DNA from: Hypanus sabinus
Lineage: Eukaryota
Direction: 5' to 3'
Assembly (NCBI RefSeq): GCF_030144855.1
Contig: NC_082714.1
Location: forward strand, 96,038,001-96,102,000
DNA length: 64,000 bases
In this document: positions 1,594-46,106 of the stretch, one piece after another
How the letters are laid out: each line of letters begins with the position of its first letter
Numbering within the stretch: position 1 is the stretch's first letter
Made by a program: the position numbers and the translations under genes
Notes under the pieces: generated by a model
What the model saw: only the letters and a program-made list of their open reading frames with translations
Database searches by the model: none
What the model was told of the DNA's origin: nothing

Positions 1594-1651
1594 ATGTGCA
1601 GGGGGCAGGGATCCAGATCCAGAGGGTTGGTCAGAAGGTGCATGGGGTTAA

Positions 1652-4423
1652 ATGGTTAAATGTGTACAAGGTTTGGGTGATCTTGAGAAGGTCATCAAAA
1701 TTCAGGGTGCAATTTGCCCGATGGAAGTTCAAGGAGCTGGGTTAGGTACAGTAGACAGTGTTTTAAGCAAAGAGAGGAGGAATGGGATAAGAATTCTACA
1801 CTTGAATGCGCGTAGTGTCAGAAATAAGACAGATGAGCTTGAAGCTCAGATGAAAATGGGGAACTACGATATTGTTGGGATAACGGAGACATGGCTGCAA
1901 GGGGATCAGGCCTGGGAATTGAGTGTACCAGGGTATACGTGCTATCGTAGAGACAGATATATGGGAAGAGGGGTAAAAAGAGGGGTAAGGGTAAAAAGAC
2001 CCTAATGGGTGTTGTGTACAGGCCCCCAAACAGTAGCGTGGTTATTGGGTACAAGTTGATTAGGGAGTTAACATTGGCATGTGCTAAAGGTAATGCAGTC
2101 GTTATGGGAGATTTCAACATGCAGGTGGACTGGGAGAATCAGGTAGGTGCTGGACCCCAGGATAGGGAGTTTGTGGAGTGTCTAAGGGATGTATTTTTGG
2201 AACAGCTTGTGCTTGAGCCAACCAGGAACGAGGCTATTTTGGACTTGGTGATGTGTAATGAACAGGAATTGATAAGTGATCTTGAAGTAAAGGAGCCATT
2301 TGGAAGTAGTGATCATAACATGATAAGTTTTTATCTACAATTTGAGAGGGATAAGGGCAGATCAGAGGTGTCAGTGTTGCAATTAAATAGAGGAGACTAC
2401 GGAGCCATGAGGGAAGAGCTGGCCAAAGTTAAATGGGCGGATGCCCTGGCAGGAAAGACAGTGGATCAGCAGTGGCAGATATTCTTGGGGATAATACAAA
2501 GGATGCAAAAGCAGTTCATTCCAATGAGAAGGAAGGATTCAAAGAGGGGGAAGGGGCCACAGTGGTTGACAAAGGAAGTCAGAGATTGTATAGCATTAAA
2601 GAAAAAGAAGTATGACAGGGCTAAGATGAGTGGGAATACAGATGATTGGGAAAGTTTTAAGGAACAGCAGGAATATAAAAGGGGATAGCAAAAGCTTTTT
2701 TAGCTATGTGAAGAGAAAGAAGATAGTTAAGAACAATGTTGGCCCCTTGAAGAATGAATTGGGAGAAATTGTTATGGGAAACAGGGAAATGGCAACAGAA
2801 TTTAATGCATACTTTAGATCTGTCTTCACCAGGGAGGACACAAGGACACAAGGATACATCTCCCAGATGTATGGATGTGCCAGGGTCATAAGATATCAGA
2901 GGAATTGGGACAGATTGACATTAGGAAAGAAACTGTGATGAGTAGACTGGTAGGACTGAAGGCTAATAAATCCCCGGGTCCAGATGGTCTGCATCCGAGG
3001 GTTGTAAAAGAGGTGGCTCAGGAAATTGCGGATGCATTGGTAATCATTTTCCAATGTTACTTAGATTCAGGATCAGTTCCTGAAGATTGGAGAGTGGCTA
3101 ATGTTGTCCCACTTTTCAAGAAGGGAGGGAAGGAGAAAACGGAGAACTATCGCCCTGTTAGCCTAACGTCAGTCGTGGGGAAGATGCTTGAGTCCATTAT
3201 TAATGACGAAATAGTGGCACATCTAGATGGCAGAAATAGGATTAGGCCGAGCCAGCATGGATTTACCAAGGGCAAATCATGCTTGACTAATCTGTTGGAG
3301 TTTTTTGAAGGTGTAACAAGGGTGTTAGATGAGGGTAAGCCAGTAGATGTTGTGTACCTAGATTTTCAGAAGGCATTCGATAAGGTGCCACATAGGAGAT
3401 TGGTGAGTAAAATCAGTGCTCATGGCATTGGGGGCAGGGTTTCAACATGGATAGAAAACTGGTTGGCAGATAGAAAGCAAAGACTGGCTGGAGGTGACTA
3501 GTGGGGTACCACAGGGCTCTGTATTGGGACCACAGCTCTTTACGATTTATGTCAATGATTTAGATGAGGGCATTGAAAACTATATCAGCAAGTTTGCTGA
3601 CGATACTAAACTGGGTGGCAGTGTGACATGCGAAGAGGACGTTAGGAGAATACAGGGAGACTTGGATAGGCTGAGTGAGTGGGCAGATACTTGGCAGATG
3701 TCATTCAATGTGAATAAATGTGAAGTTATCCACTTTGGAAGCTGGAACAAGAGGGCAGAGTATTGTCTGAACGGTGTCGAGTTAGGTAAGGGAGAAATGC
3801 AAAGAGACCTAGGAGTCCTAGTTCACCAGTCAATGAAGGTGAATGAGCAAGTGCAACAGGCAGTGAAGAGGGCAAATGGAATGTTGGCCTTTGTTACAAG
3901 GGGAATTGAATACAAGAGCAAGGATGTTCTTTTGCATTTGTACAGGGCCCTGGTGAGACCACACCTGGAATATTGTGTACACTTTTGGTCTCCAGGTTTA
4001 AGGAAGGACATTCTGGCAATTGAGGAAGTGCAGCGTAGATTCACTAGGTTGATTCCTGGGATGGCAGAGCTGTCTTACGCAGAGAGATTGGAGAGATTGG
4101 GCTTGTACACGCTGGAATTGAGGAGATTGAGAGGGGATCTGATTGAAACGTTTAAGATAATTAAAGGATTTGATAGGATTGAGGCAGGAAATATGTTCCA
4201 GATGTTGGGAGAATCCAGTACCAGAGGGCATGGATTGAGAATAAGAGGTCAGTTATTTAAAACAGAGTTGAGGAAGAGCTTCTTCTCCCAGAGAGTTGTG
4301 GGGGTGTGGAATGCACTGCCTCGGAAGATGCATTCTCTGGATGCTTTCAAGAAGGAGCTGGATAGATATCTGATGGATAGGGGAATCAAGGAATATGGGG
4401 ACAAGGCAGGGACTGGGTATTGA
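1652..4423 (+). pseudogene. CR1 ORF2 (APE endonuclease + reverse transcriptase), fragmented
   Basis: ORF pieces contain [57 protein letters not shown] and FADD; several deletions and frameshifts. Confidence 0.95.
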
Positions 4424-5099
4424 TAGTGAATGATCAGCCATGATCTCAGAATGGCGGTGCAGACTCGAGGGGCCGAATGGTCTACTTCTGCACCTATTGT
4501 CTATTGTCTATTGTCTAATAGATAGGGATGTGGGGGTTACTGAAAATTTTACCGGAAGGAGAAATTGATCCTCAAGCCATGAGGTTGCAGGCTTCCTCGC
4601 CAGTAAACGATGCATTTCTCCTGCACATCAAGATGGCCTCATCCTGGCTGAAGGCAAGATCATTGACAGACATGTCGGAAAGAATATGGGAGTAAAAAAT
4701 GAAATGTTTTGTCACCGGAAAAAAATACGTTTTTGACGGACGAAGGTGAAGACAGAAACAGCCAACCAAAGTAAATCACAAATAATTACAGATGTCTTTT
4801 TTCAGTAAGCACGCGAGTTCTGAATCCAACGAGCAATTTTTCAGGTAACTCCTTCTATGTTAATCTCCGAACAAGCCTCCGATTTTAGAAACGCTTTAGT
4901 AAATTCCATGCAATCAAAATCCACACCTCTACGTACAATCGTGTTCGTCATCTTCTCGCAGAACTCAATTAAATTCACAAGGCATACACAGGGATAATTG
5001 GCAATGAATTCATAAGAATAATCTCCAGTAATTTCCCTACCACTGACGTGAGCCTCGCTGGTCTATAGGTTCCGTGATTAATCCCATGTAAGATTTAAA

Positions 5100-7363: not shown

Positions 7364-10300
7364 GGTTTCCGGTGACGTCATCGTCGGGAATGGTAGCTTA
7401 AATCACTAGCTCCTCCGGAAAAACGCGTATTAAGCCCCGTTAACCCATCAACTATAGTATTTTTCGAAAAATATTTGAACTGAAAAGAGGGGCAAGAATG
7501 GGGAAAGAGCATGGAAATAAAAAAAGCGACACTGCGGAGCCTGCGGCCGAGAGGAGTACAGCGAGCGGCTCTCCTACCCGACCGCGTGCTAGCGAGGCGG
7601 ACGCTGGGCCTCATATTCAGGCGAAGCGGCGAATATGATCAAAATCCTGAAAGAAATAATGGAGTTCCAGAAAAATGTAAAGCAGCAGCTACATGACATT
7701 AAGTCAGAGCTCGCCAACGTCAATCAAAAAATAGCGGTGGCAGAGACTCGAATTGAGAAGGTGGAAGATCGCATTCAAAACATAGAACGAATACTGAGTA
7801 AGACGATAAAAATATTAAATCACCAAGAAGGTAAACTGCTTGACCTGGAGGGAAGAGCATGGCGGAAAAATATCAGAATATACAACGTTCCCGAATGAGC
7901 GGAGGGTTTGTCTATGACGGACAACCAAAGAATAGTATTTGGAAACTAAATTCAAGTCTACTCAGTGATCCGTACTTTAAGGAACAAATTTAAAAAGAAA
8001 TTGGTCTCTACTTAGAATTTCATGATAATGGAGAGGTTTCACCTCCTATTTTATGGGATACTCTGAAGGCTGTCTTAAGAGAGAAAATTATAGCGATATC
8101 TTCATATAAGAAAAAACATAAGGAATAAAACAGTAGAAGAATTACAAAATAGGCTGAATGAACTAGAAAGAAAAACACAAATTGAATTTGGCACAGGATA
8201 CATCACGGGAAATTAAAAGAATTAGGAATGAAATAAATAATTTGGCTATGCAAGAAATCAGGAAAAATTTAATGTTTTTGAAACAGAGACTTTGTGAAAG
8301 TGGATCAAAATCTATGATAATATTGGCGTGGAAACTGAGAAAAATAGCAGAAAATACAGTTCATAGAATTAGGGACACAAGAACGAAAATGATTTTAAAA
8401 AATAAGCTAAGTGAAATTCAAGAAGCTTTTGAAGTGTTTTACAAAACTCTATATACCAAAGTTCCGGGGAAGCATAACCCAAATTGACACCTTCTTGAAT
8501 TCTCTGGAGTTACCCAATTTAAGCGAAGAACAAAATAGAAGGATGACTGCTGACATAACTGAAGTTGAATTAAAAGCTGCAATTAGTAGGCTTAAATTAA
8601 GCAAGTCACCAGGATCAGGTGGGAATACGGCAGAGTGGTACAATGAATTTGAAAATGAGTTAATTCCTGTTTTACTCCCCACACTGAACTGGCTCTAAAA
8701 AAGGCACAAATGCCACCCATTTGGAAGGAAGCGATAATCTCAGCTATACCGAAAGAAGGCAAGGATAAAATGGAATGCGTGTCATTTAGACCAATATCCG
8801 TTCTTTTTTTTTTAATGTAGATTATAGATTATTTACCTCCATCATGGCCAAATGATTAGAGGAGTTTCTACCCATACTGATACGTGACGATCAGACAGGT
8901 TTTATAGGACAACACCAGACACAAGACAATATACGAAGTGCACTTCACATTATGGATCATATACAAAAAAATAAAATTGAAGCAATAATGATAAGCATGG
9001 ACGCTGAAAAGTCATTTGATTCGGTTAATTGGAATTTTCTTTACAGAGTTTTACATAGATTTGGTTTCCAAGACACAATTATTAAAACTATACAGACACT
9101 ATATGACAACCCTACTGCTCAGATTAAAATTATGGATATATATCAATAGTATTACCCTAGAAAGGGGTACGAGACAGGGTTGTGCATGGTCACTGCTACT
9201 CTTCGCGTTATATCTGGAACCATTAGCTCAATACATCAGACAAAATTAAGATATCAGGGGAATTACTATTAAAGGGACAGAGCATGAATTGGCTTGTTAC
9301 GCGGATGACATTTTTATCTATCTAGGGCAACCAACATACTACATTTACCTAAATTGATGTAATCCTTTGAACAATATGGTCAATTATCAGGATACAAGAT
9401 CAACATAGATAAAACCCAATTTCTTTCATATTACTATAGCCCACCAAGAGAAATTGAAAGTAGATATCCTTGGGCATGGCACACAGAGTCCTTCAAATTT
9501 TTGGGCATCATTATGCCAATAGAGATTAATCAAAATCAATTCAATGAATGGAATAAGATGTTATCAAGGTATATTTGGCAGGGTAAAGGGCCTAGAGTTC
9601 GTCTCAAAACTTAGCAATTAGCAAAGGAAAAGGGGAGATGGGGCCTACCTTCTCTTAAAGATTATTATTTTGCAGCTCAGTTGAGAGCTGTGATATGTTG
9701 GTGAAACCCATCATATGACGTTCAATGGAAAAACATTGAGGAGCAGGTACTTCCCATCCCCATACAAGCAATTTTGGCTGATAACAACCTGCAAAGATAC
9801 AAAAATACTATTGATAACCCATGGGTGAAATTGACTCTTAAAATATGGAAAATACTATCAAAGAATACAATCTAGAGGGAGATATTGCAATTGTTAAATG
9901 GTGTGCATACGACTCGGATTTTACACCAAATAAATTGGATACCAGTTTTAAGGACTGGACAGCTAAAGGAATAACAGTTCTTTGCAACATAATGAAAGAA
10001 GGAACACTGTTCAGTTTTGAAATGCTTGAAGAGAAACACTTATTAGAAAAACAAGATTTTTATCGGTTTACAAATGCGACAATATGCTAATAAGACGCCA
10101 AAAAATCTAACCAAGGCAAGTACATGCTTGATAGAGCTATTTAGAAAAGCATATAATTCAGATAACGACAGTAGAATCATTTCAAGCATGTATAAGGGGT
10201 TGTCAAATCTTAAAACCCATTCGACTTCATACATTAAAACAAAATGGGAGAAGGAAGGAGGGATAATTATATCTGAGGAAGAATGGGCAATAATATGGAG

Positions 10301-11030
10301 GTATCAATGGAAGTGTACCAGTTCACAGAAATGGAGGGAGTTTGGATGGAAAAACTTGATAAGATATTTTATTACACCATCTCAGAAATCCAATTATGAT
10401 AGTAACATCCCCGTTTGCTGGAGAAATTGTGGAAAACAAAATGCAAATCATTATCATATTTTTTGGGACTGCCTTGTTTTCAAAAACTATTGGAGGAAGA
10501 TACATAATGCCCTACAAGATATCTTTAGATGTGAAATACCCTTATAGAGTAAGACCATATATTTTGGATATATACCTCAAGAATGCTTGAAAAGAGATAA
10601 ATATTTAATGAATATACTGTTGGCGGCTGGTAGAAAGGCTCTTACTAGGAAATGGTTATCACAGGAGAGCCCAACTTTAAATACATGGATGGAAATTACA
10701 TAGACATTTACAAAATGGAGAAGATAACAACATCTGTTAATCATAAGCTGGAACAATTTGATTCATACTGGGAAAAATGGTTTAACTACATAATGCCTCA
10801 TAGGCCTGATTTTATTCTCACAAATCAATGAAGATGTTGTTACAAAAAAGATCACTCCCTACTTGTACATTTTTTTTCCTTTTGCTTGTTTTTTTCTTTC
10901 CACTCTTTTCTATAAGTGCATACCTCAGATAAATACTTTGTGGAGATTTGTGATATATATGTACAATGTCTGAAATACATCTTATAGAAATGTTTGATGA
11001 TTAACTTCAATTAAAAAAATTACAAAAAAG
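7364..11030 (+). mobile_element. L1-clade LINE with 5' end, internal deletion and A-rich tail; decayed
   Basis: ORF1 coiled coil and RxNIRIxxVPE (7635-7898) joined at about 7920 to the end of the ORF2 endonuclease. RT motifs KSPG, DAEKSFD, GTRQGC and YADD. Flanked by ATACATAATCG (7353-7363) and ATACACAATCG (11033-11043). Confidence 0.9.
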
Positions 11031-11032
11031 TC

Positions 11033-11165
11033 ATACACAATCGACTTTTCGGGCAGAGTCACTTCATCAGGGCGGTTCCATCGATCTTGTTTGACCTGCT
11101 GGGTTCCTCCAGCGTTTTCTGTGCGTTACTCTGGATTTTCAGCATCTGCAGAATTCCTTCTGTGT
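11033..11165. repeat. Right part of a short palindromic non-autonomous repeat split by the L1 (left part 7301-7363)
   Basis: Arms TGCTGGAGAACTTGGCAGGTC and GACCTGCTGGGTTCCTCCAGCG are reverse complements. Related copies at about 11525-11620, 21330-21445 and 46870-47005. Confidence 0.65.
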
Positions 11166-13099
11166 TGGTTCCTGACAAGATTAGTGGCTGACTCCAAGAC
11201 TTGGGGAAATAGAGGTTATAATGATAAACTCTAATAAATGCAATAATAAATACAACTTGGAATTCGGGAAGCATTTAAAACTCTGAGAGTGGAAAATTGC
11301 GGAGCTCGCTCGACGTGGTGAACAGCTGACGTGGATTTAATGCAAGAATATGTGGTCACGCGAGAGGAATGAAGCGGATGTACATGACGATGTGTGAGAT
11401 GGATAAAGGTGAAAGCCAGTAACTGCAGAGCAGAAGCAACAGCGCGGAAAACGAGGGTCGAATGAATCTTCCGTACTGTCGATTTTTTGCAGGAGCTTTA
11501 ATAGCAGAGATTAACTTTCAGAGTAACACGCACAAAATGCTAGAATAAATCAGCAGGTCAGGTAATATCTTTGGAAAGGAATAAGCAGTTAACACTTCAG
11601 GCCGAGATCCTTCCTGAGGACTGCTGACTTTGAAAATATTTGACGAAGAGGAGAGAAGAGTGACACAGAATTAAAATTTAATTCATAGTAAAACTGCTGG
11701 TTTGGAACAGAAATACCCATGTTGCACCATACCAGAATCTATGCTGGAAAGAAATTTGACCTTAAATAACAGGGAAACGAATTAGCCCTTGATGTGCAGA
11801 GGCCAGGGTGTGATGTCATTATGGATGTCCAGTGAGCTGCGACCGGTAGACTCGCAGGCAGACTTACGCAGAATGTATCTATTTCGCATTCAGACCCTTC
11901 AAAGACCAGTAAACAATTACAACAATCAAGATTACCGCTTGAGATGGAAAACGTGACCCAACTAGTGCGAGTTTCCTGCTTTCGTCGCATGGGTGCTGGT
12001 ACAGTGGAAGGCACAGCTCATCACATCGAGCATATTTATGGAAATTAACCTCAAACACAGTGATCTATGTTGCACTTGGTGTGTAGGGGCATCGTAATAT
12101 AAACAATGCTCTGACCTAACTAAATACTGAAAGTAGAAATTTAACACTGTAACAATATAATTTCGGGTCACCGATCACCTCCAACAGGATGTGCTTTGAT
12201 ATATAAGGTTACTTCCCCGAATTTCGCAAAATTCAGAAGGCCCAAAGACATCGAAGCAGAATTAGGCCATCGGTCTGCTCCGCCATTCTATCACAGCTAG
12301 TTCATTATCCCTCTTAATACCATTGTCCTGCCTTTTTCCGTAACTTTCGACTTCCTTACTAATCAAGAACCTTTTTAAACATAACCAATAAATTGACCTC
12401 CACATCCGTCTGCGGCAATGCATTCCACAGATTCACCATACTCTGGACATCCTCTGGACCCTCTCCATTGCCAGTACATCACTTCTTAGAATGGGGGCCC
12501 ATAGACTGTTCAGAAATTTACAAGTGCCTCAGTATTATGTCAATGCCATGGGAATCACCACTTATTATGAACTACATTCGATGTTAGAACGTGATGATTG
12601 CAAGAACAGCCCAAAGACTTGGAACCCAGACGACTAGCATTTATTGAGAGCGTAATCCATTTCAACCTCAGCACAGGTCACAAATTCACCGAAATTCTCT
12701 CGACTGGCCCCTGTAGGTGCAGTTCCGATAACTCGAACAGGGTGTTATGCACACAAAGCAGGTCAACTAAAATTCACTGCAGTATCACACCAGACCTTTC
12801 CAGCAGCTCTTCCCAAGCCCTGACCAAGACGTTCAAGTGAGGCAAACACAACCTCCTGGCTTTGTCCTGTGATATCTCTGGTTCTAAACCCTGCAATTCC
12901 CTCCCTTACTTCGCAAAGTAACTTCACAAGAGGGTCTGCAATAAGTACGGACGTCTCATCGCCAGCTTCTGCGGAGATTTAGAGAAGAGGACACCAATGG
13001 TAGTTTTCCTAGTGATACAATTCTCTCCACGCCGGAAACTATGAACAAACCATGTTCTGTTTGGAAGTCTCTCTCAACAATGCACCACAGCCTTTTGAC

Positions 13100-13155
13100 A
13101 TTGTCGTTTCCTTTTGGTGAAGGATATTTTGTGCTCTGCTGTTCTCTGTCCAGAT
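13100..13155 (+). pseudogene. Candidate degenerate leader exon of the IgSF receptor pseudogene
   Basis: Hydrophobic stretch (RIFCALLFSV or YFVLCCSLS) followed by a GTAACT donor at 13156, 315 nt upstream of the V-exon acceptor. No intact ATG. Confidence 0.3.
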
Positions 13156-13470
13156 GTAACTCCAAACGCAGAGCAGAATATTTGGCGAGTCCTACCTGAA
13201 ATGGCCACCAAACTTCTCAATGTAAGGTCACCTGCGGATAGATACACAAGATATTTTTGCCGGTGACACATTCTGTAAAAGAATAAAGAAAAAAAATTGC
13301 GAATTTGATCAGGTTAACGTGGAACGTCCTTCTGGTCCTCCGTTAGATGGTGCTGACATACCCGAGCAAATAAATACATTCGAAAATAACGGCGCATTTT
13401 TAAACTCCAGCCAATGTGTTCATTTTGAATTCCTTCGTCCTCTAGTAGATATTTCTAATTTTTTGCACAG

Positions 13471-13778
13471 AACCCTAGCGTTTTTTCTCGGCCAGCCCGG
13501 CTGCAGTGTCTGTAGAGGTCGATCAGAGGATTGAACTGTCCTGTGAATTCAGACACAGTCTGGAGGTCGCATGTAATATTCTCTGGTAGAAATAGACGAA
13601 GCCCCGGTAGCCATCAAATCCATGCACTGCTACCAGACCGGATGTAGGACTACTTACAAAAAAAAAACGTCTCCGGCGAACGTATATCAACTCTGGAAAT
13701 CCGATTCCGGCTCGTACTGATGTGTTGGACGGGGTAGCTACCCACCGATTGTCAAAGGACCAACAATCCTAATTGGAG
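13471..13778 (+). pseudogene. Decayed Ig V-set exon with J-like G strand (non-rearranging VJ-type domain)
   Basis: Acceptor TTTTTTGCACAG and donor G|GTGAGG, phase 1-1. Reads SPAAVSVEVDQRIELSC(13542)-x13-W(13584)*K*TKP, CYQTGC, STLEI, DSGSY*C (13703-13723), PPIVKGPTILIG. Contains stops and frameshifts. Confidence 0.8.
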
Positions 13779-13994
13779 GTGAGGGGACTGGGCAGTCGGA
13801 TTGTACTCAGCCGTGTACTTTTCAACCATCTAAACGAACGAGTAATTTCACGATCTCCTGAAGGATCCGGTGAACATGACTCTTGAGAATACAGGCACGG
13901 TCATCTCCCGGAGCCATCGCTGGAGCTGACCTCAGACCAGATTACAGCAGCGAGACCCGAAAGCAGAAACCGAATCGGTATTCAACGTCATCGG

Positions 13995-14080
13995 CATGCG
14001 TTTGGCCCGTCACCCTCTCTTCGCACTGCTACCATCGGTCGAGAGGTGCAGAAGACTTGGGTCCCAAGCTGTAGTTTTTG
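13995..14080 (+). mobile_element. Short LINE 3' fragment (Rex1/Babar-like)
   Basis: CCCTCTCTTCGCACTGCTACCATCGGTCGAGAGGTGCAGAAG resembles 40140-40200. Confidence 0.4.
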
Positions 14081-14385
14081 CCACGCCGTCGTCGGGATCC
14101 TGGACCAGTTTAAGTCGCCGCAGCGCTGAACTGCCTCGGCATCCTGCGGACACATTCTGCGTATTCTGTACTTCGCCTTCTGTGTTTTATTTGTTCTTTT
14201 GCATTTTGGATGTCTTTGCGGTGTGGATTCTATTATATTTCTTTATTTTGCAGCTGGCTGCAAAGAGATTACTCTTGAGGTTGAGTATAGGATATACATA
14301 CTCTGATAATAGATTTTAACTTTGAGCTTTAAAATTCAAAGTTCTTCGGGGAACGTTGTGGCTCTTGGTATACATATCTGTCCAG

Positions 14386-14760
14386 AGAGTTCAGCCAAAC
14401 TGACGGACCTGTTGATGTTATTCCTGCCGTCTGAGACGAACGGGTTACTTTACCTGGTGTGTCTCGCTGTTGGACTTTCTTCCGTCCATACTGTACTTTA
14501 ATTGAACATATCCGGCAGATTACAGAAAGGTGGAGCGATCCCGGAATGTTTGACCCAGACCAGAGGCACAGTGTTAGAAGTCAGGAGCCAGTAACACTGA
14601 AAACCTGGACGATCGACGGAGTCTGTACCTGCATCACGCAATTTCTGGGTGCGGACAAGACAAAGGCCGATTTTATTGTTGTCACTGCCGCCGGCGGTCT
14701 TGGGCAATAGTCCCGGCGTTGTCCTGCTTATCTGTTTACCACTTCATAGTGGGACCGGGC
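14386..14760 (+). pseudogene. Decayed Ig C1-set exon, possibly running into a transmembrane segment
   Basis: Acceptor TCTGTCCAG, phase 1. Reads LYLVC(14460)LAVGLSSVHTVL*[W>L]NISG; after a 1-nt shift, ITERWSDPGMFDPDQRHSVRSQEPVTLKTWTIDGVCTC(14630)ITQ; then hydrophobic ILLLSLPPAVLGNSPGVVLLICL in another frame. Confidence 0.8.
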
Positions 14761-14919
14761 CGGTAGAGATGCCCCGCCCAGCCAAGCCGCAAGGGCTCGG
14801 GTTGAACGGGCATGCACTGAACAGCATAACCAAGTTACAGGAACTGTGCACAGGAACATCTGCGCTGTATATGTATTGGACACTTCCAAATCCAGATAGG
14901 AAACACCCAAGAAGGTAGT

Positions 14920-15245
14920 GAATAAATTGTTTCCTATATAGAGGGAGGTTGGGTGTCGAGAGCCCGAGGGCATGGCCACAGAATAAAAGGACGTCCCTTT
15001 AGAACATAGAGAAGTGGGAATAGCTTTCACTAGAATATGGCGAGTCTGTGGAATTCAGCATCACAGACGGCCTGGGAATCCAAGTTATTGGTTATAAGTA
15101 AAGCAGAGGTTCGTGGGCTTTTGATTAGTAAGGAAGTCAAAGGTGACAGACAGGCAAGAGAATTGCCTTCAGAGGTTAAATAAATCAGCCACGACGGAAT
15201 GGCGGACCGGGCATGATAGGCAGAATGGTCTAATTCTGTTCCTAT
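14920..15245 (+). mobile_element. CR1 3' fragment
   Basis: CR1 RT C-terminus and 3'UTR stem motifs (GACGGAATGGCGGACCGGGCATGATAGGCAGAATGG). Confidence 0.7.
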
Positions 15246-15436
15246 GTCCGCTGGAATACTTCTCTGACGCCACGTCCCAAATAAATTTACACGTGTTTAT
15301 TGGATCTGCTTATATCTAGCAACACAAACATTAGTTGTCCAAATCTACTTGCCCTTTGACCACTGGGGGTTTAGGGCGAACCTCCTCGTTAATTCTCTGA
15401 TGCCCGAGTGATCAAAATGCTTTCCCAGTGCTTCAG

Positions 15437-15640
15437 GAAACGACTTCTAGGAGTTCCATGATAAAAGTGAGACGTTGGGCTTCCCAGATGAGACGGTGTA
15501 CAGCTTAGAAGTAGATAACCTTCCCTCATCGCGACGTTCCTGGTGACCGTAAAAACAATGGCCCGAATAACCTCGACAGAGTACACTTCTATCATTTTGT
15601 CCCAAGTGCAACCCCGTGGCGGGGGTGGGGGAAAGTTTCT
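15437..15640 (+). pseudogene. Candidate cytoplasmic-tail exon with tyrosine motifs (TVYSL; TEYTSI)
   Basis: Acceptor CTTCAG at 15431-15436. ETVYSL at 15490-15507 and TEYTSI (ITSM consensus TxYxxI) at 15576-15593. One stop; the two motifs are in different frames. Confidence 0.35.
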
Positions 15641-16049
15641 GTATCGTGTTTAAATAGGCAATTATGAGGGATATCATCCTCACAGCACGATAATAGGTGA
15701 AAGGCCAAGGCTCAATGAGAATATTGCGACTCTGCAACAACGTATAAAAGACAGGATGAGTGAGTGAAAACCTGTTATATAGGATTTTCTGTAAAAAAAA
15801 ATTGCGAGACCAATTCGAGATTATTATCTCTATGGAAAAACAGTGCAAGGAGTACAGAGGGTTGCAGGTATTCTTACATGAAAATAAAAAACAGAATGGC
15901 GGGCAGGTGCAACAAATAGTTCAATGTTTAACTGGCGTCTTCTAGTTTGCGAAAGTTTTGCAGTTTAAGATGCGGATATGTCGTTACAATTATAGTGTGT
16001 ACAGGTGAGGCCAGTACTGGAGTACCAAGAAAAGGTTGTCCCCTTAATT

Positions 16050-16740
16050 AAGCAAGGATATGGTAACATTGCAGATAGATCATACAACAGCACAGCACAT
16101 GGACAGGCTAAACTTACCCCTGGCATCTCCTCTGTACCTACTTCCAAGCACCTTAAAACTGTGTCTTCACGTGCTAGCCATTTCAGCCCTGGGTAAAAGC
16201 TTCTGACTATCCACACAATCAATGCCCCTCATCATCTTATATATCTCTATCAAGTCACCTCTCATCCTCTGTCTCTCCAAGGTAAAAAGGCCGAATTCAT
16301 TCAATCTATTCTCATAAGCACGTTCCCCAATCGAGGCAACATCTTTGTAAGTATCCTCTGCACACTTTCTATGGTTTCCACATCCTTCCTGTAGTGAGGC
16401 GACCAGAAATGAGCACAGTACTCCAAGTGGGGTCTGACCAGAGTCCTATATAGCTGCAGCATTGCCTCTCGGCACTTAATCCCAGGACTGATGAAGGCCA
16501 ATGCACCACATGTCTTCTTAAACATAGAGTCAACCAGCGTAACAGCATTGAGTGTCCTGTGGACTCGGACCCCAAGATCCCTCTGATCCTTATATTTGAC
16601 CTACAAAAATGTGCCACCTCACACTTACCTGGGTTGAACTCCATCTGCCACTTCTCAGCCCAGTTTTGCATCCTATCAATGTCCCTCTGTAACCTCTGAC
16701 AGCCCTCCACACTATCTACAACACCTTCAACCTTTGTCTC
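16050..16740 (-). mobile_element. CR1 3' fragment
   Basis: Minus-strand ORFs with LQRDIDRMQNWAEKWQMEFN and LVRPHLEYCAHFWSP. Confidence 0.9.
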
Positions 16741-17769
16741 ATCAAGAAATTTACTCACCCATGTGTGTCTTTCGACTCCTGTATTTCCTCACTGATGGTA
16801 GTAAAGAGAAGATGTCCTTAATTATAGATGCCGCCTTTCTGAGGCATCACCTTTTGACGATGCTGGGAAGACTAAAGCTCATGATAGAGCTGACGTGTGT
16901 GCAACCCTTTGCAATATTTTCCTATCCTGTGCTGTGCCTCCACATACCAGTCGGTGATACGACCTGTTAGAAAGCTCTCTATAAATTTCCTAGCGTCTTT
17001 TGTAACAAACTAAATCTCTCAAAAATTGCAATTGTATCTTCATAATTGTATCAATATGATGGCACTACGGTACATCTTCATAGATGTTGACACCCAGGAA
17101 TTTGAAACTTCCTGACTATCCCTGCAGATATGAATATCACTGGATATCCATGTACCTATCTAAACGCCAGCGTTATGTTAGCTTCAACCACTATCCCGGA
17201 ACCTACCAGATTCTGCTGGATCTGATAGTAGGTGAATATCTTGGGAACAGTAACCAAACGGTATTAGGTTTTGAGATAATTATAAGTAAGAATATACCTG
17301 GATCTTGTGGAAAGGTCCGGTCCTAAACGGGATGGCTGCTGAGGGAAAAGTGGGCAAATTCAGATAGCATCAGATGAGGTGGGATGGAAGCTAAAGGACG
17401 TTTACTGGGGGCAACTGTTGTTGAACAAGTCCACGGTCAACGTCCGACATCAAGGATCAAGTATGGATTGTTAACTTACAATTATAACGAATAAAGAATT
17501 ATATAAAAATAAAATTAGAGGTTAAAGGGCGGGTGTGGAATAAAGTGTGCATAAATAGATAAATACCTGCATGTAATACCATGTAAACAGCATTGTATGA
17601 AATAAAAGTCGTTTTAGGTGCTTACAGTACAGTATATTGTTTTCGTGTCTCCATGGCATTTTCCAGAGGGAGCTTTTGTGGAAGGCAGTTTGGACGGTGG
17701 GTAGTGTCCACATGGGGTTGATCCAGCAGATCAAGATCAGAAAGTTCCGGAAAGGAGTAAGAATAAGGA

Positions 17770-18480
17770 TAGCAACGGAAGGGAACGTTGGATGAATCGA
17801 GAAGTCCTGAATTTAGTCATGAAGAAAATGGAAGCGTACGTAAAGATTGGGAAGTTGAAATTAGACCCTGCCCTGTGGAATGTAAGGTCGCCGGTAGTGT
17901 TGAAGCTGATGATTAGAAAAGTCAGAGAAGCCTATCTAAATGGAGAACTAATTCAGATATCGGAGTTGCAAAGGGACTTTGGAGTCCTCGTGCAGGAATT
18001 CATAAAGTTTAACTTGCATTTTGCGTTGGTAGTAAGCATGCAAATGCATTGTTCGCATTCAATTCAAGATTACTAAAATATTAATGCAAGGTTGTAATGC
18101 TGGGACATTGATCCGTCCGCTCTAGAAGCTCTTTCTCCAGTTTTGGGTCTCTTATCTAAGAAAAAGGGTGTTGACATTGGCGGGGGTTTTGAGAAGGTTC
18201 ACCAGAATGGACCCGGTAATGAAAGGGTTCATAAATGAGGATAGTTTCCTGGATCTGATCCTATACTCGCTGGAATTTAGAAAAAAATGTGTGTGTGTGG
18301 GTTGGGGGGTGTGTGGTTCCGGTGCGAGTGATCTCATTGAAACATATCGAATATTTCAAGGTCGAGATAAAGTGAACGTGGTAAAAATATGACATATTGT
18401 CGGGGAGTCTAGGACCAAAAGGCACGGCCTTAATATAGACGTACATCTAGATCAAAGATAAGGCGGGGGGGGGGATTTCT
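17770..18480 (+). mobile_element. Degraded CR1 ORF2 fragments
   Basis: WMNREVLNLVMKK, ELQRDFGVLV, RRFTRMDP and DLIETYRI remnants. Confidence 0.7.
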
Positions 18481-18729
18481 TTAGTTCAAGTTCAACAAGA
18501 AAATATCCAAAGGAAATAATATTCCTCTGGGGCCAAGGTGCAATACAGATCACCAGCAATCACATACAGCATATATAATCATGTTGACAGATAAAATCAT
18601 ACATTTACAATAAATAATTATAATAATATCCTCTTGCAGTTCGACACAATCTGATTGCTTACACAGGTACAGGCAAGTGGCAAACGTCATTCAGAGAAAG
18701 CTTGCTATAAAATACAAAATCACAAATAA

Positions 18730-18915
18730 AATTACACCTTCTTATCTACATAAGCCTGATCCTGTTCCAGAATCAGAATACCGCAAATTTTATCACGACC
18801 ACAACACCGGGTAAAACCCATGCATTCCACGAGGAGGACATATGGAGACTCCTTAAAGGTGACGCTGGGATTGAACTCTGAACTCCGGAACGGCCCGAGC
18901 TGCAATAGCGTCTGA
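18730..18915 (-). mobile_element. Degraded V-SINE/HE1-like SINE
   Basis: Reverse complement reads GAGTTCAATCCCAGCGTC..GTCCTCCTCGTGGAATGCATGGGTTTTACCCGGTG; same family as 6685-6860. Confidence 0.55.
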
Positions 18916-18968
18916 TGTATCGGGTGTGTACTGCCTTCTTTATAGTCTTTCATGTAATAATGTCCAAT

Positions 18969-18994
18969 CACACACACACACACACACACACACA
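18969..18994. repeat. (CA)n microsatellite
   Basis: Direct inspection. Confidence 0.95.
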
Positions 18995-19014
18995 CCTGAT
19001 AATGTAAGATTTTT

Positions 19015-19910
19015 TTCTTTTCAAATCTTTTTTTTATTATTATTATTCAAAAATAGCACATGTACATCGAAGTAACAACACTTACAATGCCTCAAAAAAG
19101 AAGAAATTATCTTAAAGATTGAAAATTTTTGTGAATGGAAAAAAACCTACTAAGCAAGAAAAGTGAGGGAAAAAAGGAAACTCATTGGAGGTACAACCCC
19201 GGAGCCTTGCGTCATAGAAAAAGCTTCTAAAAATAAACATCAAACCGCCAACAAGAAAAAAAGAAATATCAAAAAAAAATTACATTTAAATCGTGGAGGA
19301 AATCTATCAGTTAACTGGAATAATAATAACGAGCAAATGAGCCCCATCACTTCTCAAAATCAAATAAAGGTTCAAAGGTTCGACTTCTAATTTTCTCCAA
19401 GCTCAGACACAGCATCACTTGAGAGAACCATTGTGACAAAGGAAGAGCTGATATATCCTTCCATTTCAACAAAATGTCCCTCCTAGCTATCAATGTAACA
19501 AACACAATAACATGTTGGTCAGACACAGAAATACCATGGATATTTTGAAGAATTATTCCAAAAAGCACAGTCAATTTACTAGGTTGTAAGTTGATTCTGA
19601 GTGCTTTAGAAATTGTCGCAAAGACTGACTTCCAAAAGTGTTTTAATATAAAATATGACTAGGACATATGTGCCTGTGTAGCTATCTCAGTTTTACATCT
19701 ATCAGAATAGGTCAAAATTCGGAAATATTTTAGAAAGTCTCTCTTTCGTCAAATGGTAACGATGTATAATTTTAAATTGAATCAGTGAATGACTCGCACA
19801 GATTGAAGAAGAATTGATCGTTAACCAAAGACGACGCATTTCAATGCATGCTTCGAAAGTCATGTGAGAATCGTCTTTTAAAAATTTATTCCGGGATGGG
19901 GTATTCCGGA
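19015..19910 (-). mobile_element. L1-clade LINE 3' fragment
   Basis: T-rich tail at about 19015-19045. Peptide TLIARRDILLKWK..SQWFSQVMLCLSLEKIR matches the ORF2 C-terminus of the L1 at 34871-35701. Confidence 0.85.
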
Positions 19911-20139
19911 ATCCGGCACCATGGAGGAATCAAAAACTAACTCCGGACTTGCAGTTGAAATTCAGATGACTTAATGAAATGATTTGTCTTGATTGCACAG
20001 ACAGCTTTAGTTACGACAACGATCTCTTACGTGATTCGCCGGTCAAATTCGTTAATCACCAGATAACCTCGGTTTCAAAAGCATAGTGCCATCACAAAGA
20101 TTTTCTTCACATTTTGCCCCGAGAAACAGTTGAACCATC

Positions 20140-20480
20140 ATTAGTTCCGCGGCTCCTTCCTGCCACTGTCATTGCTGGCCTCTGGCTGTTCACCCTCCCT
20201 ATTGAGAATATCCTGCAGCCACTCTAATGCATCCTGGACCTTGGCAACCGGGAGGAAACAAATCGTACTATTGTCTTTTTAGCGGCAACAGAATGTCCCC
20301 CTAACTATCGCACTGCCTGATTTTACCCTTCCCTGCTGGGACATACGATCATCGTTTCGGGCCGAGATATCAGTCATGTATCCCTTTCCTTCGCAGGCGG
20401 CGTGATTTATTTGTTTCACTGTCCCTACCGCTCCCAGGTGGGACCTTTTGAAATAGACAGTATGCTTGGCTGTTTCTTGT
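20140..20480 (-). mobile_element. Degraded CR1 ORF1 fragment
   Basis: Reverse complement of CCCCCTAACTATCG and CAACCGGGAGGAAACA resembles GDSIVRG and CLPGAR coding sequence. Confidence 0.5.
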
Positions 20481-21446
20481 TTCTTTGACCTGGACACATG
20501 CAAGTCCGGCAATAATGGTACTCTGCAGCCAATAGAGCTTTGACAAGGGGCCACTCCGGACATCGGAAGTTTGGAGAATAGAGGACATTAATGAGGTCAC
20601 GACTCGAGGATAAAAGGCAGAAGCGGGTCGTAATAGAGCTTTGACCAGCTGTCAGTGGGATTCATTAGCAAGACCAAATTAAAGGAAGGCAGAGGCAAGC
20701 GTAGTGGCCATACTGTCGTTGTCGTAGTGGACGTAGTCATAGTAGTGATCTTAAGGTTTTAACTTCGAGTCTGCGGCGAAGGGAGGTTCCACTCAGAGAA
20801 AGCAAAGAGAAGAAAAGTTCAAAGGCCAAAGTAACTTTATTATCGAGACACGTACACTGCCTGCCACCATATACTAGTAGGAGATTCGGCTTCTTCAAGG
20901 TATTCACGGGAACCACGAAATACAATAGAATCACTGAAAAATTATAATCGCTGAAGGATCGGATACCGTGAGTTATGAAAGCCAATGTTCTGAAAGCTCT
21001 CTTTCCGATGCTAGGAAATTTCAAGGAACTAAGGACCTGTATGCCCAGATCCTTTTCTTCTATTGCACACCACAGTGCCCCACCTATCACTGTCTAAATC
21101 TTACCCTCCTTTTTCCTACTGATATGAAACTTCTCACACTTGTCTTCATTCAAATCCATCTGACATTTTCAACCTAAAACAAATGAATGCAATTTCAATC
21201 TCAATACATTATTTTCATCCAAGTTCCATTCAAGAAGTTTGTACATAAATTTACTATAGAAAAATAGTAGACAACAATAAATAATTTGCCATTTCTGGAA
21301 CAGAAGTGAAAAATATGGACTGAAATCGTTTGGCTCAAAACGTCAACTCTCGATTCATTTCCACAGATACTGCTTCATCTACTGAGTTGTTCCAGCATTC
21401 TGTGTGAGTTCGTCTGGATTTCCAGCATCTGCAGAATCTCTTGAGT

Positions 21447-23392
21447 TTAGAAACATAGAAACATGAAAAACCTACAGTACAATACAGCCCGACCTGCCCA
21501 CAAAGCTGTGCCGAACAAATCCCTGCCTTGCAAATTGCTAGGCATACCTATCGCCGTCTATTTTTCTAAGCTCTATGTACCTATCCAAAAGTCTCTAAAA
21601 GGACCCTATCGTATCCGCCTCCACCAGCGTTTCAGGCAGCCCATTCCACGCACTCATCACTCTCTGAGTAAAAGACTTACCCCTGATATCTCCTCTGTAC
21701 CTTCTCCCCAGCACCTTAAACACGTGTCCTTTTGTGGAACCATTTCAGCCCTGGGAAAAAAAGCCTCTGACTATCCACACGATCAATGCCTCTCATCATC
21801 TTATACATCTCTATCAGGTCACCTCTCATCCTCCGTCGCTCCAAGGAGAAAAGACCGAGTTCACTCAACCTATTCTCATAAGGCATGCTCCCCAATCCAG
21901 ACAACATTCTTGTAAATCTCCTCTGCACCCTTCCTATGGCTTCCACATCCTTCCTGTAGTGCGTCGACCAAAACTGAGCACAGTACTCCAAGTGGGGTCT
22001 GGCCAGGGTCCTATATAGCTGCAACATCACCTCTCGGCTCCTAAATTCAGTTCCATGATTGATGAAAGCCAATACACCGTACTCCTTCTTAACCACAGCG
22101 TCAACCTGCGCAGCTGCTTTGGGCGTCTGGACTCGAACTCCAAGAAAGCTTCGATCCTCCACACTGCCAAGACTACTACCATTAATATTATATTCTGCCA
22201 TCATATTTGACCTACCAAAATGAACCACTTCTCACCTATCTGGGTTGAACTCCATCTGCCACTTCTCAGCCCAGTTTTGCATCTTATCAATGTCCCTCTG
22301 TGACCACTGACAGCCTTCCACACTATCCACAACACCCCCAACCTATGTGTCATCAGCAAACTTACTGATCAATCCCTCCACTGCCTCATGCAGGTCATTT
22401 ATAAAAATCACGAATAGTAAGGGACCCAGAACAGATCCCTGAGGCAAACCACTGGTGACCGACCTCCATGCAGAATATAACCCGTCTACAGCCACTCTTA
22501 TGCTTTCTGTGGGCAAGCCTGTTCTGGATACACAAAGCAATGTCCCCTTGGATCCCATGCCTCCTTACTTTCTCAATAAGTCTTGCATGGGGTTCCTTAT
22601 CAAATGCCTTGCTGAAATCCATATACACTACATCTACTGCTTTTCCTTCATCAATGTGGTTAGTCACATCTTCAAAAGTTTCAATCAGGCTCGTAAGGCA
22701 CCACCTACCCTTGACAAAGCCATGCTGACTATTCATAATCATATTATACCTCTCCAAATGTTCATAAATACTGCCTCTCAGGATCTTCTCCATCAACTTA
22801 CCAACCACTGAAGTAAGGCTGATCAGACTGTAACTTCCTGGGCTATCTCTTCTCCCTTTCTTGAATAAAGGAATAACATCCGCAAACCTCCAGTCCTCCA
22901 GAACCTCTCCCATCCCCAGTGATGATGCAAAGATCATCGCCAGAGGCTCCTCCCTCGCCTCCCACAGTAGCCTGGGGCACATCTCATCCGGTCCCGGCGA
23001 CTTATCCAATTTGATGTTTTCCAAAAGCTCCAGCACATCCTCTTTCTTAACATCTACATGCTCAAGCTTTTCAGTCTGTTGCAAGTCATCATTACAATCA
23101 CCAAGATCTTTTTCTATAGTGAATACTGAAGTAAAGTATTCATTAAATAACTCTGCTTTTTCGGCCGGTTCCACCCACACTTTCCCACTGTCACACTTGA
23201 TAGGTCCTATACTTTCACATCTTATCCTCTTGCTCTTCACATACTTGTAGAATGATTTGGGATTTTCCTTAGTCCTTCCCGCGAAGGCATTCTCATGGCC
23301 CCTTTTGGGTCTCCTAATTTCATTCTTAAGGACCTTCCAAATAGACTTATAATATTCTAGATCTCTAACATTACCTAGCTCTCTGAACCTCT
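21447..23392 (-). mobile_element. 5'-truncated CR1 (RT region and tail)
   Basis: Minus ORFs with [28 protein letters not shown] and FADD; AGAAACAT-type tail at about 21447-21465. Confidence 0.9.
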
Positions 23393-44361: not shown

Positions 44362-44711
44362 GTATCCTGGGGTCAATCAAACCCCAATGTCCGGTCCTTT
44401 CTCCGCGGGACAGACTGCCCGCTTAGAGTGCCGAATACAGAATGGAAACGTTGGAAGTTACAGTGCTGCGTGGGACCGACATCGTCCCGAGAGGAGACCG
44501 GAGGGAGTAATATATCATGACTCAAGCAATACCATTTACAGAGGACCCGGCATCACTGAACGTTTCCAACCGTCCAGAGACACCTCCTCCAACAGTCACA
44601 TCCTGACCATCGGCAACATGGAGACCGGCGACTCGGCCGTTTATTACTGCAGAGTGTGGGAGAGTAACATAGGTTGGGTCTACGGGCCGGGGACGATCCT
44701 GGAGATAAAGA
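44362..44711 (+). CDS. IgL germline-joined VJ exon
   Basis: VNQTPMSGPFSAGQTARLEC..GNVGSY..W..ITERFQPSRDTSSNSHILTI..DSAVYYC-RVWESNIGWV-YGPGTILEIK; donor A|GTAAGT at 44712; no heptamer or nonamer between V and J. Confidence 0.95.
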
Positions 44712-45777: not shown

Positions 45778-46106
45778 GTAGCGAGAGCAGAAAGCCCTCG
45801 GTCCTCCTGCTCCCTCCCTCCTCGGAGCAGACCGGTTCGGGTTCTGCCACTCTTTCCTGCCTCGAGAGCGGCTTTAAGCCTGGATTGGTCGCGCTGCGCT
45901 GGAGCGTGGTTGGCGTGGAGACGGAGAGCGGGGTGACGACAGGTGCCGTGTCCCTGGACACCGACCAGACCTACAGACTGAGCAGTTACCTGCGGGTACC
46001 CACCGCTGCCTGGAACAAGGGCTCGAGCTATTCCTGCAGCGTGAGCCACAGCTCGCTGAGCTCGCCGCTGCGCAACACCATCTCTTCACCCGCCTGTGCG
46101 CAGTGA
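45778..46106 (+). CDS. IgL constant (C1) exon
   Basis: Acceptor CACACAG. SESRKPSVLLLPPSSEQ..ATLSCL..W..SGVTTG..DQTYRLSSYLRVP..WNKGSSYSCSVSH..ISSPACAQ*, with the penultimate-region Cys for the heavy-chain bond. Confidence 0.95.

What the first reader, a model, noticed from the sequence alone, without database searches (positions are those of the whole stretch)
13100..15640. Hidden non-rearranging VJ-C1 antigen-receptor-like gene (decayed) between two IgL clusters
Seen: a phase 1-1 exon (13471-13778) with V-set spacing C-x13-W, W*K* (WYKQ-like), an extra Cys pair CYQTGC, STLEI, DSGSY*C and a J-like strand (IVKGPTILIG, one base from the GxG bulge) in the same exon, with no RSS. About 600 nt downstream, a phase-1 exon has C1-set hallmarks (LVCLAVG..[W]NISG..D.D..SVRS..W..CTC). 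No ORF call shows this because of stops and frameshifts. Established: C1 domains are largely confined to Ig, TCR, MHC, B2M, tapasin and SIRP, and single-exon VJ plus C1 non-rearranging genes (PRARP-type, shark UrIg) are discussed as relatives of the antigen-receptor precursor. Inference: this is a pseudogene of a chondrichthyan V(J)-C1-TM receptor family physically linked to, and perhaps co-duplicated with, sigma-cart IgL clusters. It is not Ig or TCR, since the V and C1 sequences are unlike the IgL at 44-46 kb.
Basis: partly seen in the sequence, partly recalled or inferred. Interest (0 to 1): 0.88.

Follow-up and report, generated by a model that had tools for sequence, protein, structure and literature searches.

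The report
Dead stingray V-C1 receptor gene
This is the broken remains of a stingray gene for a cell-surface receptor built like an antibody light chain that needs no DNA rearrangement; the relic is an ordinary dead gene, and working copies of the same little-studied family exist in rays, skates and sharks.

Summary
Window 13471-13778 is a decayed V exon with its G (J-like) strand built in and no RSS. Window about 14386-14708 is a decayed C1 exon.

Both are collinear with an intact elasmobranch gene family: leader, V(J), C1, TM, then a cytoplasmic tail with a YxxL/ITIM motif. An example is Hypanus sabinus LOC132399641.
- tblastn E-values are 1e-19 to 1e-22.
- The family HMM scores the read-through at 213 bits, E 2e-67.
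- DNA homology of 67-76% extends into the 5' flank and intron 1.

The copy is dead:
- four in-frame stops and four frameshifting indels;
- the core Trp of C1 is lost;
- the leader exon and proximal promoter are deleted;
- about 550 nt of repeat DNA sits in the V-C1 intron;
- the C1 splice donor is lost;
- no TM or tail exons are found, and three small RNA runs show no cover.

It belongs to none of the three living stingray/manta subgroups, so it is probably old.

It is not an IgL or TCR segment. Linkage to IgL clusters is real. Co-duplication with them is not supported: one of three intact loci has an IgL cluster within 10 kb.

Earlier notes of this scan report intact VJ-C1-TM genes of this kind elsewhere in this genome, so the relic adds little. 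PRARP or UrIg kinship could not be tested.

The parts
12527..13104 (+). 5' flank, homologous to the region upstream of intact family genes
   Evidence: blastn against L001 9222-9815 gives 67% over 603 nt, E 6e-36. Shorter matches to L002 and L003 are at 70-73%.
13091..13111 (+). Deletion junction. The proximal promoter, 5'UTR, leader exon and the start of intron 1 are missing (about 470-590 nt compared with intact genes).
   Evidence: In all three comparisons homology stops about 185 nt before the ATG (L001 9815, L002 9815, L003 9817). It resumes 290-410 nt after the ATG (L001 10409, L002 10290, L003 10321). No leader-like sequence scores above shuffles in 12000-13470.
13112..13470 (+). Remnant of the 3' part of intron 1, ending in a polypyrimidine tract and an AG acceptor
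   Evidence: It is part of the 69% blastn block between L001 10409-11163 and window 13091-13820. The apparent 'leader' match just upstream of the V exon comes from translating the T-rich tract.
13471..13778 (+). V(J) exon relic, 308 nt against 318 nt in the intact gene. In-frame stops at 13476 (TAG), 13587 (TAG) and 13718 (TGA). Frameshifts of -7 nt near 13595, +5 nt in the A-run near 13664 and -17 nt near 13702.
   Evidence: Exon-to-exon alignment with L001 10804-11121 gives 76.9% identity. tblastn E-values are 3e-19 to 5e-22. Pfam gives Ig_3, V-set and ig. PDB hits are almost all kappa light-chain V domains, in register.
13779..14385 (+). V-C1 intron, 607 nt against 83 nt in the intact gene. 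About 550 nt of repetitive DNA is inserted between about 13821 and 14373.
   Evidence: Homology to L001 ends at 13820 and resumes at 14374. Positions 13810-14064 are multi-copy in a related organism's run, with word depth up to 206.
14386..14708 (+). C1 exon relic. Stop TAA at 14499 (was Tyr). The core Trp is now Leu (14502). A 1-nt deletion lies at about 14516. The last 20 or so codons have diverged. The donor GT is replaced by AG at 14709-14710.
   Evidence: blastn against L001 11193-11455 gives 76% over 263 nt, E 2e-48. tblastn identity is 49-65%. The family HMM gives E 1e-15 and 5e-6 for the two pieces. The same sequence, without gaps, is in three other DNA runs.
14935..15260 (.). Tail of a transposable element just downstream. 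It is not part of the gene. It marks where recognisable gene homology has already ended.
   Evidence: blastn and tblastx find copies at 12.3, 32.6, 58.0 and 63.2 kb. No TM or cytoplasmic exon was found in 14636-22000 or anywhere in the window.

Best explanation
Window 12.5-14.7 kb holds a long-dead, truncated paralogue of an elasmobranch multigene family of type I membrane receptors.

What the intact genes look like (shown): six phase-1 exons, namely a split leader, a V exon that already contains the J-like G strand (so no RSS and no rearrangement), one C1 exon, a TM exon and two cytoplasmic exons.

What the intact proteins probably do (inferred from sequence): the ectodomain resembles an Ig light chain. 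It carries a conserved extra Cys pair in the V domain and an invariant membrane-proximal Cys, so the receptor is probably a disulfide-linked dimer. The TM is uncharged, and the tail ends in a conserved YASL motif, I/S-x-Y-x-x-L in rays, which is ITIM-like. The family therefore most likely signals inhibition through SH2 phosphatases.

What the copy in this window does: nothing. It has lost its promoter-proximal region and leader exon. Stops and frameshifts break both remaining exons. A repeat has inserted into the V-C1 intron. The C1 splice donor is gone, and no TM or tail exons remain. It drifts as neutral DNA inside a chromosome region that also carries IgL miniclusters.
For: Finding the family:
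- Exhaustive phmmer with the stop-free C1 piece 14531-14707 found P0015 (Mobula birostris, 347 aa, 51% identity) and P0036 (Narcine bancroftii, 301 aa). Both have V-set plus C1-set.
- Family searches found more than 60 members in rays, skates and about a dozen shark genera.

Matching the relic to it:
- tblastn of every member gives four collinear HSPs covering the V and C1 exons. Identity is 45-51% to ray members, 38-41% to skates and 32-37% to sharks.
- The family HMM scores the read-through at 213 bits, E 2e-67. In the six-frame control it hits nothing else in the window except the IgL exons.
- The exon structure was derived from L001.
- DNA homology extends into non-coding flank and intron. 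The leader deletion is seen against three different genes.
- The lesions are mapped.
- No leader, TM or tail exons were found.

Reality and expression:
- The stop and the frameshift in C1 are present, without gaps, in contigs from three other samples at about 96.5% identity.
- Three small RNA runs give no cover of the relic, although a transcribed paralogue is seen in one of them.

Family features: the conserved Cys pair, the membrane-proximal Cys and the YASL tail come from alignment A1.
Against: - Pfam does not recognise the relic's C1 read-through, and V-set falls below the curated cut-off. The assignment rests on the specific family, not on generic models.
- The RNA runs are tiny (77-99 million letters) and their tissue is unknown, so lack of transcription is weakly shown.
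- TM and tail exons could lie beyond the 7 kb searched in detail, too decayed to detect.
- The inhibitory function and dimerisation of the parent family are inferred from motifs only.
Confidence: 0.93

Rival explanations
1. A decayed germline-joined Ig light-chain minicluster (L-VJ-C) of an isotype different from the one at 44-46 kb.
For: - The layout is compact like an IgL cluster.
- The relic V best matches kappa light-chain V domains in the PDB.
- In frame 0 the C1 exon reaches a stop about 25 codons after the F-strand Cys, much as an IgL C exon would.
- IgL clusters are nearby.
Against: - Both exons, plus the intron and the flank, are homologous to genes whose C1 exon splices on to TM and cytoplasmic exons.
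- The stop at 14708 lies exactly where the family's splice donor should be.
- The family-specific Cys pair and the GDSS/PSETNG/WNISG/GVCTCI motifs are present.
- Similarity to the window's IgL is not significant.
Confidence: 0.03
2. The relic is not inert. It may be transcribed as a non-coding RNA, or it may serve as a sequence donor for gene conversion of live family members.
For: - The family is multicopy and clustered on one chromosome: L001 and L002 lie 0.9 Mb apart.
- The C1 exon is somewhat better conserved (76%) than the intron (69%).
Against: - The promoter-proximal region is deleted.
- No RNA cover was seen.
- The higher exon identity is expected, because the intact partner is under selection.
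- At 67-77% identity it is a poor conversion donor.
Confidence: 0.03
3. A chance resemblance to Ig motifs in non-coding DNA.
For: - Several frames had to be combined to read the exons.
- Generic Pfam scores are weak or absent.
Against: - The family HMM gives E 2e-67.
- There is collinear DNA homology of more than 1.6 kb to three genes.
- The six-frame control is clean.
Confidence: 0.005

Closest known systems
Unnamed elasmobranch V(J)-C1-TM-YxxL receptor genes. Examples: Hypanus sabinus LOC132399641, LOC132398870 and LOC132400086; Mobula birostris XP_072139900.1; Narcine bancroftii XP_069792500.1. Public records auto-name them 'uncharacterized', 'immunoglobulin kappa light chain-like' or 'Ig heavy chain Mem5-like'.
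   Same: - V and C1 exons with the same boundaries and phases.
- The family-specific Cys pair.
- The KGPT(L/I)L(V/I)G G strand, and the PSETNG, LVCL, NISG, WSDPG, SVRSQ and GVCTCI motifs.
- Homologous 5' flank and intron 1.
   Different: - The relic has no leader, TM or tail exons.
- It carries four stops and four frameshifts.
- It has a repeat insertion in intron 2 and has lost the C1 donor.
- It falls outside the three living myliobatiform subgroups. Its best identity is 56% over 198 columns.
PRARP genes (Fu et al. 2019, J Immunol 202:1992, cited in PMC10751288). The paper itself is not held, so the features below are from my own knowledge.
   Same: The parent family has the architecture described for PRARPs: a non-rearranging VJ-type V domain, one C1 domain, a TM and an ITIM-type tail.
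   Different: - No PRARP sequence could be compared here.
- As far as I recall, PRARPs were described from birds and other bony vertebrates.
- The farthest relatives found here are lungfish and sturgeon proteins at 27-38% identity.
UrIg and UrIg2 (PMC12227049)
   Same: - A non-rearranging single-exon VJ with a split leader, followed by C1-type domains.
- Elasmobranch genes linked to antigen-receptor loci and auto-annotated as IgL.
   Different: - UrIg has three C1 domains and is secreted. UrIg2 has nine to eleven C domains.
- This family has one C1, then a TM exon and a YxxL tail.
- The solved UrIg2 was not among the 60 best PDB matches, which were all antibody chains.
Ig light chains (kappa type) and the sigma-cart IgL clusters of this window
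   Same: - A two-domain V-C1 ectodomain.
- The best PDB matches of both the family and the relic V are kappa light chains.
- Physical neighbourhood.
   Different: - The family has no RSS and no secreted C terminus, and it is membrane-anchored.
- Identity to the window's IgL is 23-31% for intact members and not significant for the relic.
SIRP family
   Same: A V domain plus C1-set domains, a TM and inhibitory tyrosine motifs. SIRP clusters are among the nearest named clusters in the ESM Atlas feature search.
   Different: SIRPs have two C1 domains and a different tail. This was not tested by alignment or by a tree.

Membership tests
Elasmobranch V(J)-C1-TM-YxxL receptor family | A V-set exon that includes the G (J-like) strand, with no RSS | tested here: met
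   The relic exon is collinear with the family V exon from FR1 to ...KGPTILIG, followed by a donor. There is no heptamer-spacer-nonamer in the window.
Elasmobranch V(J)-C1-TM-YxxL receptor family | The family-specific Cys pair in the C'-C'' region (C..TGC), nearly invariant | tested here: met
   The relic's CYQTGC aligns to DCRKTGC. The two Cys columns are at least 90% conserved in A1.
Elasmobranch V(J)-C1-TM-YxxL receptor family | A single C1-set exon in phase 1 directly after the V exon | tested here: met
   Window 14386-14708 is homologous to L001 11205-11525. Intact members pass the Pfam C1-set cut-off. The relic's own read-through does not.
Elasmobranch V(J)-C1-TM-YxxL receptor family | A split leader exon upstream | tested here: not met
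   The leader exon and promoter-proximal DNA are deleted relative to three intact genes. This is loss in a pseudogene, not evidence for a different family.
Elasmobranch V(J)-C1-TM-YxxL receptor family | A TM exon and cytoplasmic exons with the YxxL/ITIM motif | tested here: not met
   No protein or DNA match anywhere in the window.
Ig light-chain minicluster | V and C exons closest to an IgL isotype, with a C exon that ends the protein | tested here: not met
   The relic's similarity to the window's IgL is not significant. Its closest relatives splice from C1 to a TM exon.
PRARP | Sequence orthology to the chicken PRARP genes and their paired gene arrangement | not testable with these tools
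   The paper is not held and no PRARP sequence is available. Only the architecture can be compared.
UrIg/UrIg2 | A VJ exon followed by three or more C1-type domains | tested here: not met
   Intact family genes have one C1 exon, then the TM exon. UrIg features are from PMC12227049.
T-cell receptor chain | Separate V and J segments with RSS, and a TM with charged residues | tested here: not met
   V and the G strand are in one exon, and there is no RSS. The family TM is uncharged.

The most novel reading that the evidence does not exclude
The relic may be the last trace of a fourth batoid lineage, otherwise extinct, of a family that is the cartilaginous-fish branch of the PRARP-type non-rearranging VJ-C1 inhibitory receptors. 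On this reading the family consists of genes left over from the pre-RAG antigen-receptor ancestor, still interspersed with Ig light-chain miniclusters. The mixed locus, with both live and dead copies, could then show how light-chain-like receptors and true light chains diverged, or whether the receptors arose secondarily from germline-joined IgL clusters.
Probability: 0.25. Interest if true: 0.6.

Novelty: new member of a known kind. Interest (0 to 1): 0.3.

Why it matters
On its own the relic matters little. It is one more pseudogene in a multigene immune locus.

Its value is as a pointer and a calibration point:
- It led, from raw sequence, to a large elasmobranch family of light-chain-like V(J)-C1 receptors that do not rearrange. 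That family has only automatic, misleading names in public records ('kappa light chain-like', 'Ig heavy chain Mem5-like').
- It shows that the family has turned over by birth and death inside the IgL region.
- Because it decays neutrally, it gives a neutral yardstick for dating the family's subgroups.

The family bears on whether PRARP/UrIg-type genes are remnants of the antigen-receptor precursor. That question needs the intact members, which this scan has already flagged elsewhere in this genome.

Tried and rejected
1. Stop-free pieces against Pfam gave nothing: they are too short.
2. My own read-through of the V exon in frames 0>1>2 gave Pfam Ig_3/V-set hits. It was shown wrong once intact relatives were found.
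3. The first C1 read-through used the wrong frame in the middle. It found nothing in Pfam or the PDB. The corrected one still found nothing in Pfam.
4. The word-index search with the V read-through found no candidates, because full-length relatives fall outside its length filter.
5. Pairwise comparison with the window's own IgL was not significant. tblastx of the region against the window found only transposon tails.
6. Most hits of the exhaustive search were WD40 repeat proteins. They matched the 'SDPG/SPDG' stretch many times over and are spurious.
7. The apparent in-frame leader just upstream of the V exon was rejected. It comes from translating the polypyrimidine tract, and the intact gene shows the same effect.
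8. Searches for leader, TM and tail exons scored no higher than shuffles.
9. The tree could not place the relic. It sits on a long branch (0.78) at an unresolved fork.
10. The PRARP and first UrIg papers are not held.
11. One family locus (P0074) is not on record.
Full report
**What is there**

A regular-expression scan of all six frames of the 64 kb window found V-type (C..W, D.G.Y.C) and C1 B-strand patterns together in only two places: this region and the genuine IgL cluster at 44.4-46.1 kb. Stop-free pieces were too short for Pfam.

A read-through of the V exon with X at each break gave Ig_3 and V-set hits, first in my own frame choice. With the correct frames the results were Ig_3 E 1.3e-5, V-set E 1.1e-4 and ig 22.4 bits, which is above its cut-off. 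Against solved structures the V read-through matched 154 chains. Nearly all were kappa-type light-chain V domains, in register from FR1 to the G strand. The C1 read-through matched nothing in Pfam or the PDB. The relic was not significantly similar to the window's own IgL.

**How the relatives were found**

Laying public runs on the region showed contigs that match 14531-14657 at 83-87%. They came from a related organism and from one RNA contig of the same organism label. These contigs read as an open C1 E-strand motif (YSVRSQM.IPVETW). That showed frame 0 was the coding frame from about 14516 onward.

I then used the one exhaustive HMMER job on the stop-free piece 14531-14707. Most hits were WD40 repeat proteins matching 'SDPG' many times, and these are spurious. 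Two hits were 300-350 aa proteins with V-set plus C1-set: P0015 (Mobula birostris XP_072139900.1) and P0036 (Narcine bancroftii XP_069792500.1).

Their sequences match the relic motif for motif, including the unusual Cys pair and the J-like strand. Searching with P0015 and then with a family alignment found more than 60 members:
- rays: Mobula, Hypanus, Hemitrygon, Narcine;
- skates: Amblyraja, Rhinoraja;
- about a dozen shark genera;
- distant relatives in lungfish and sturgeons at 27-38% identity.

All of them carry only automatic names.

**Proof of homology**

- tblastn of every member against the window gives four collinear HSPs over the two exons, with E down to 1e-22. Identity is 45-51% to stingray and manta members, 38-41% to skates and 32-37% to sharks.
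- A family HMM was run against all 2682 six-frame segments of the window. It hit five relic pieces in the right order and, apart from these, only the two IgL exons.
- The read-through scores 213 bits, E 2e-67.

**Gene structure and lesions**

The intact H. sabinus gene LOC132399641 (locus L001) has these exons, all phase 1:

| Exon | L001 coordinates |
|---|---|
| leader | 10001-10055 |
| V(J) | 10804-11121 |
| C1 | 11205-11525 |
| TM | 12235-12327 |
| cytoplasmic 1 | 14076-14129 |
| cytoplasmic 2 | 14372-14434 |

DNA homology between this gene and the window covers three blocks:

| Region | Window | L001 | Identity |
|---|---|---|---|
| 5' flank | 12527-13104 | 9222-9815 | 67% |
| intron 1, V exon and start of intron 2 | 13091-13820 | 10409-11163 | 69% |
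| C1 exon | 14374-14635 | 11193-11455 | 76% |

The same pattern holds against a second H. sabinus gene (L002) and a Mobula hypostoma gene (L003). In all three comparisons the block that holds the proximal promoter, 5'UTR, leader exon and start of intron 1 is missing from the window.

Exon-level alignment gives these lesions:

| Exon | Position | Lesion |
|---|---|---|
| V | 13476 | stop (TAG) |
| V | 13587 | stop (TAG) |
| V | about 13595 | 7-nt deletion |
| V | A-run near 13664 | 5-nt insertion |
| V | about 13702 | 17-nt deletion |
| V | 13718 | stop (TGA) |
| C1 | 14499 | stop (TAA, was Tyr) |
| C1 | 14502 | core Trp now Leu |
| C1 | about 14516 | 1-nt deletion |
| C1 | 14709-14710 | donor GT replaced by AG |

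The last 20 or so codons of C1 have also diverged. Intron 2 is 607 nt instead of 83 nt, because about 550 nt of repetitive DNA has been inserted. No leader, TM or tail exon can be found. A transposon tail lies at 14935-15260. No RSS is present.

**Is it real, and is it expressed?**

Contigs from three other samples of the same organism label cover the C1 exon at about 96.5% identity without any gap. The listed differences do not touch the TAA at 14499. The stop and the frameshift are therefore inherited features, not assembly errors. The V exon was not covered by those shallow runs.

Three small RNA runs gave no cover of the relic, and one of them holds a transcribed paralogue. This is weak evidence of silence.

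**Age**

In a quick maximum-likelihood tree the relic sits on a long branch at an unresolved fork. It lies outside the three well-supported subgroups that each contain both Mobula and stingray members. At the DNA level those subgroups are 76-82% alike over intron 1 to C1, whereas the relic is about 69-76% from each. The lineage therefore probably split off at or before the origin of those subgroups, that is, before mantas and stingrays diverged. This is an inference. Faster neutral decay also lengthens the branch.

**The parent family**

Alignment A1 shows these conserved features:
- a V domain with a nearly invariant extra Cys pair;
- a degenerate J-like G strand: [F/L]xxG[P/S]TLLVG, with Narcine keeping G-K-G;
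- GDSS at the V-C1 junction;
- a C1 domain, and an invariant membrane-proximal Cys;
- an uncharged TM;
- a tail ending in YASL: I/S-x-Y-x-x-L in rays, P-x-Y-x-x-L in sharks.

Among solved structures the ectodomain is most like kappa light chains over both domains. I infer a disulfide-linked, ITIM-type inhibitory receptor. Nothing about ligand or function is shown.

**Linkage to IgL**

L001 carries a sigma-cart-like IgL cluster about 5 kb upstream of the receptor gene, on the opposite strand. The window has an IgL cluster 30 kb downstream of the relic. L002 and L003 have no IgL within 10 kb, and no second relic accompanies the IgL at 44-46 kb. Linkage holds. Unit-wise co-duplication is not supported.

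**Comparison with known families**

The architecture equals what I recall of the PRARPs (Fu et al. 2019, cited in PMC10751288). UrIg (VJ plus three C1 domains, secreted) and UrIg2 (VJ plus nine or more C domains, TM) differ in domain number (PMC12227049). The ESM Atlas feature search places the family beside unnamed V-set/C1-set clusters and then SIRP clusters.

**Earlier notes of this scan**

Earlier notes report intact VJ-C1-TM genes elsewhere in this stingray genome. One follow-up calls them a large unnamed family in sharks, rays and bony fishes. My independent result agrees with that, but I could not read those windows to confirm they are the same family.

**Verdict**

The object is an ordinary, old pseudogene of a family that is interesting but already annotated, and already flagged by this scan.

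Noticed in passing
window 44378-44719 and 45753-46090 (+): An intact-looking germline-joined IgL cluster. VJ sits in one exon ending ...YGPGTILEIK, and the C exon is about 1 kb downstream. FR2 reads W-D-R-H-R-P instead of the usual WYQQ. The cluster is 67-75% identical in DNA to an IgL cluster next to the receptor gene in H. sabinus locus L001.
   Followed up: partly
L001 2598-4965 (-) and 10001-14437 (+): In H. sabinus an IgL cluster and an intact V-C1-TM receptor gene lie head to head, about 5 kb apart. Two other family loci (L002, L003) have no IgL within 10 kb.
   Followed up: partly
window 13810-14064: The DNA inserted in the V-C1 intron is highly repeated in a related organism's run, with word depth up to 206. 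ARAGORN found no tRNA-like head in it. The element type was not identified.
   Followed up: partly
window 4461-4517 and 57935-57992; L001 10377-10434: A 57-nt transposon end is 98% identical between the window and intron 1 of the H. sabinus gene. That is far closer than the surrounding paralogous DNA (about 69%). It suggests a young element and a window genome that is the same as, or very close to, H. sabinus.
   Followed up: no
window 14307-14750, runs X1, X3, X4: Contigs from three other samples with the same organism label differ from the window at about 3.5% of sites, mostly at the same sites. One of these is 14567 C>T, which restores the family's Tyr codon. This is high for within-species variation. 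The samples may belong to a diverged population or a sister species.
   Followed up: no
window 14531-14584, run X10 record 2: A 165-nt RNA contig reads MEGWSDPGTLDPDQSYSVRSQMQIPVETWRS. It is a transcribed, open paralogue of the C1 exon, so the family is expressed in this organism.
   Followed up: partly
window 41483-41632 (-): The N-terminal extension of the gene model P0066 (residues 16-60) matches here at 42% identity, E 7e-5. This is probably transposon-derived sequence wrongly included in that gene model.
   Followed up: no
window 16301-16758 (-) and 652-4423 (+), 58224-61004 (-): Long ORFs that look like LINE or reverse-transcriptase remnants. The window is rich in transposons. An assembly gap of 144 N lies at 54646-54789.
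   Followed up: no
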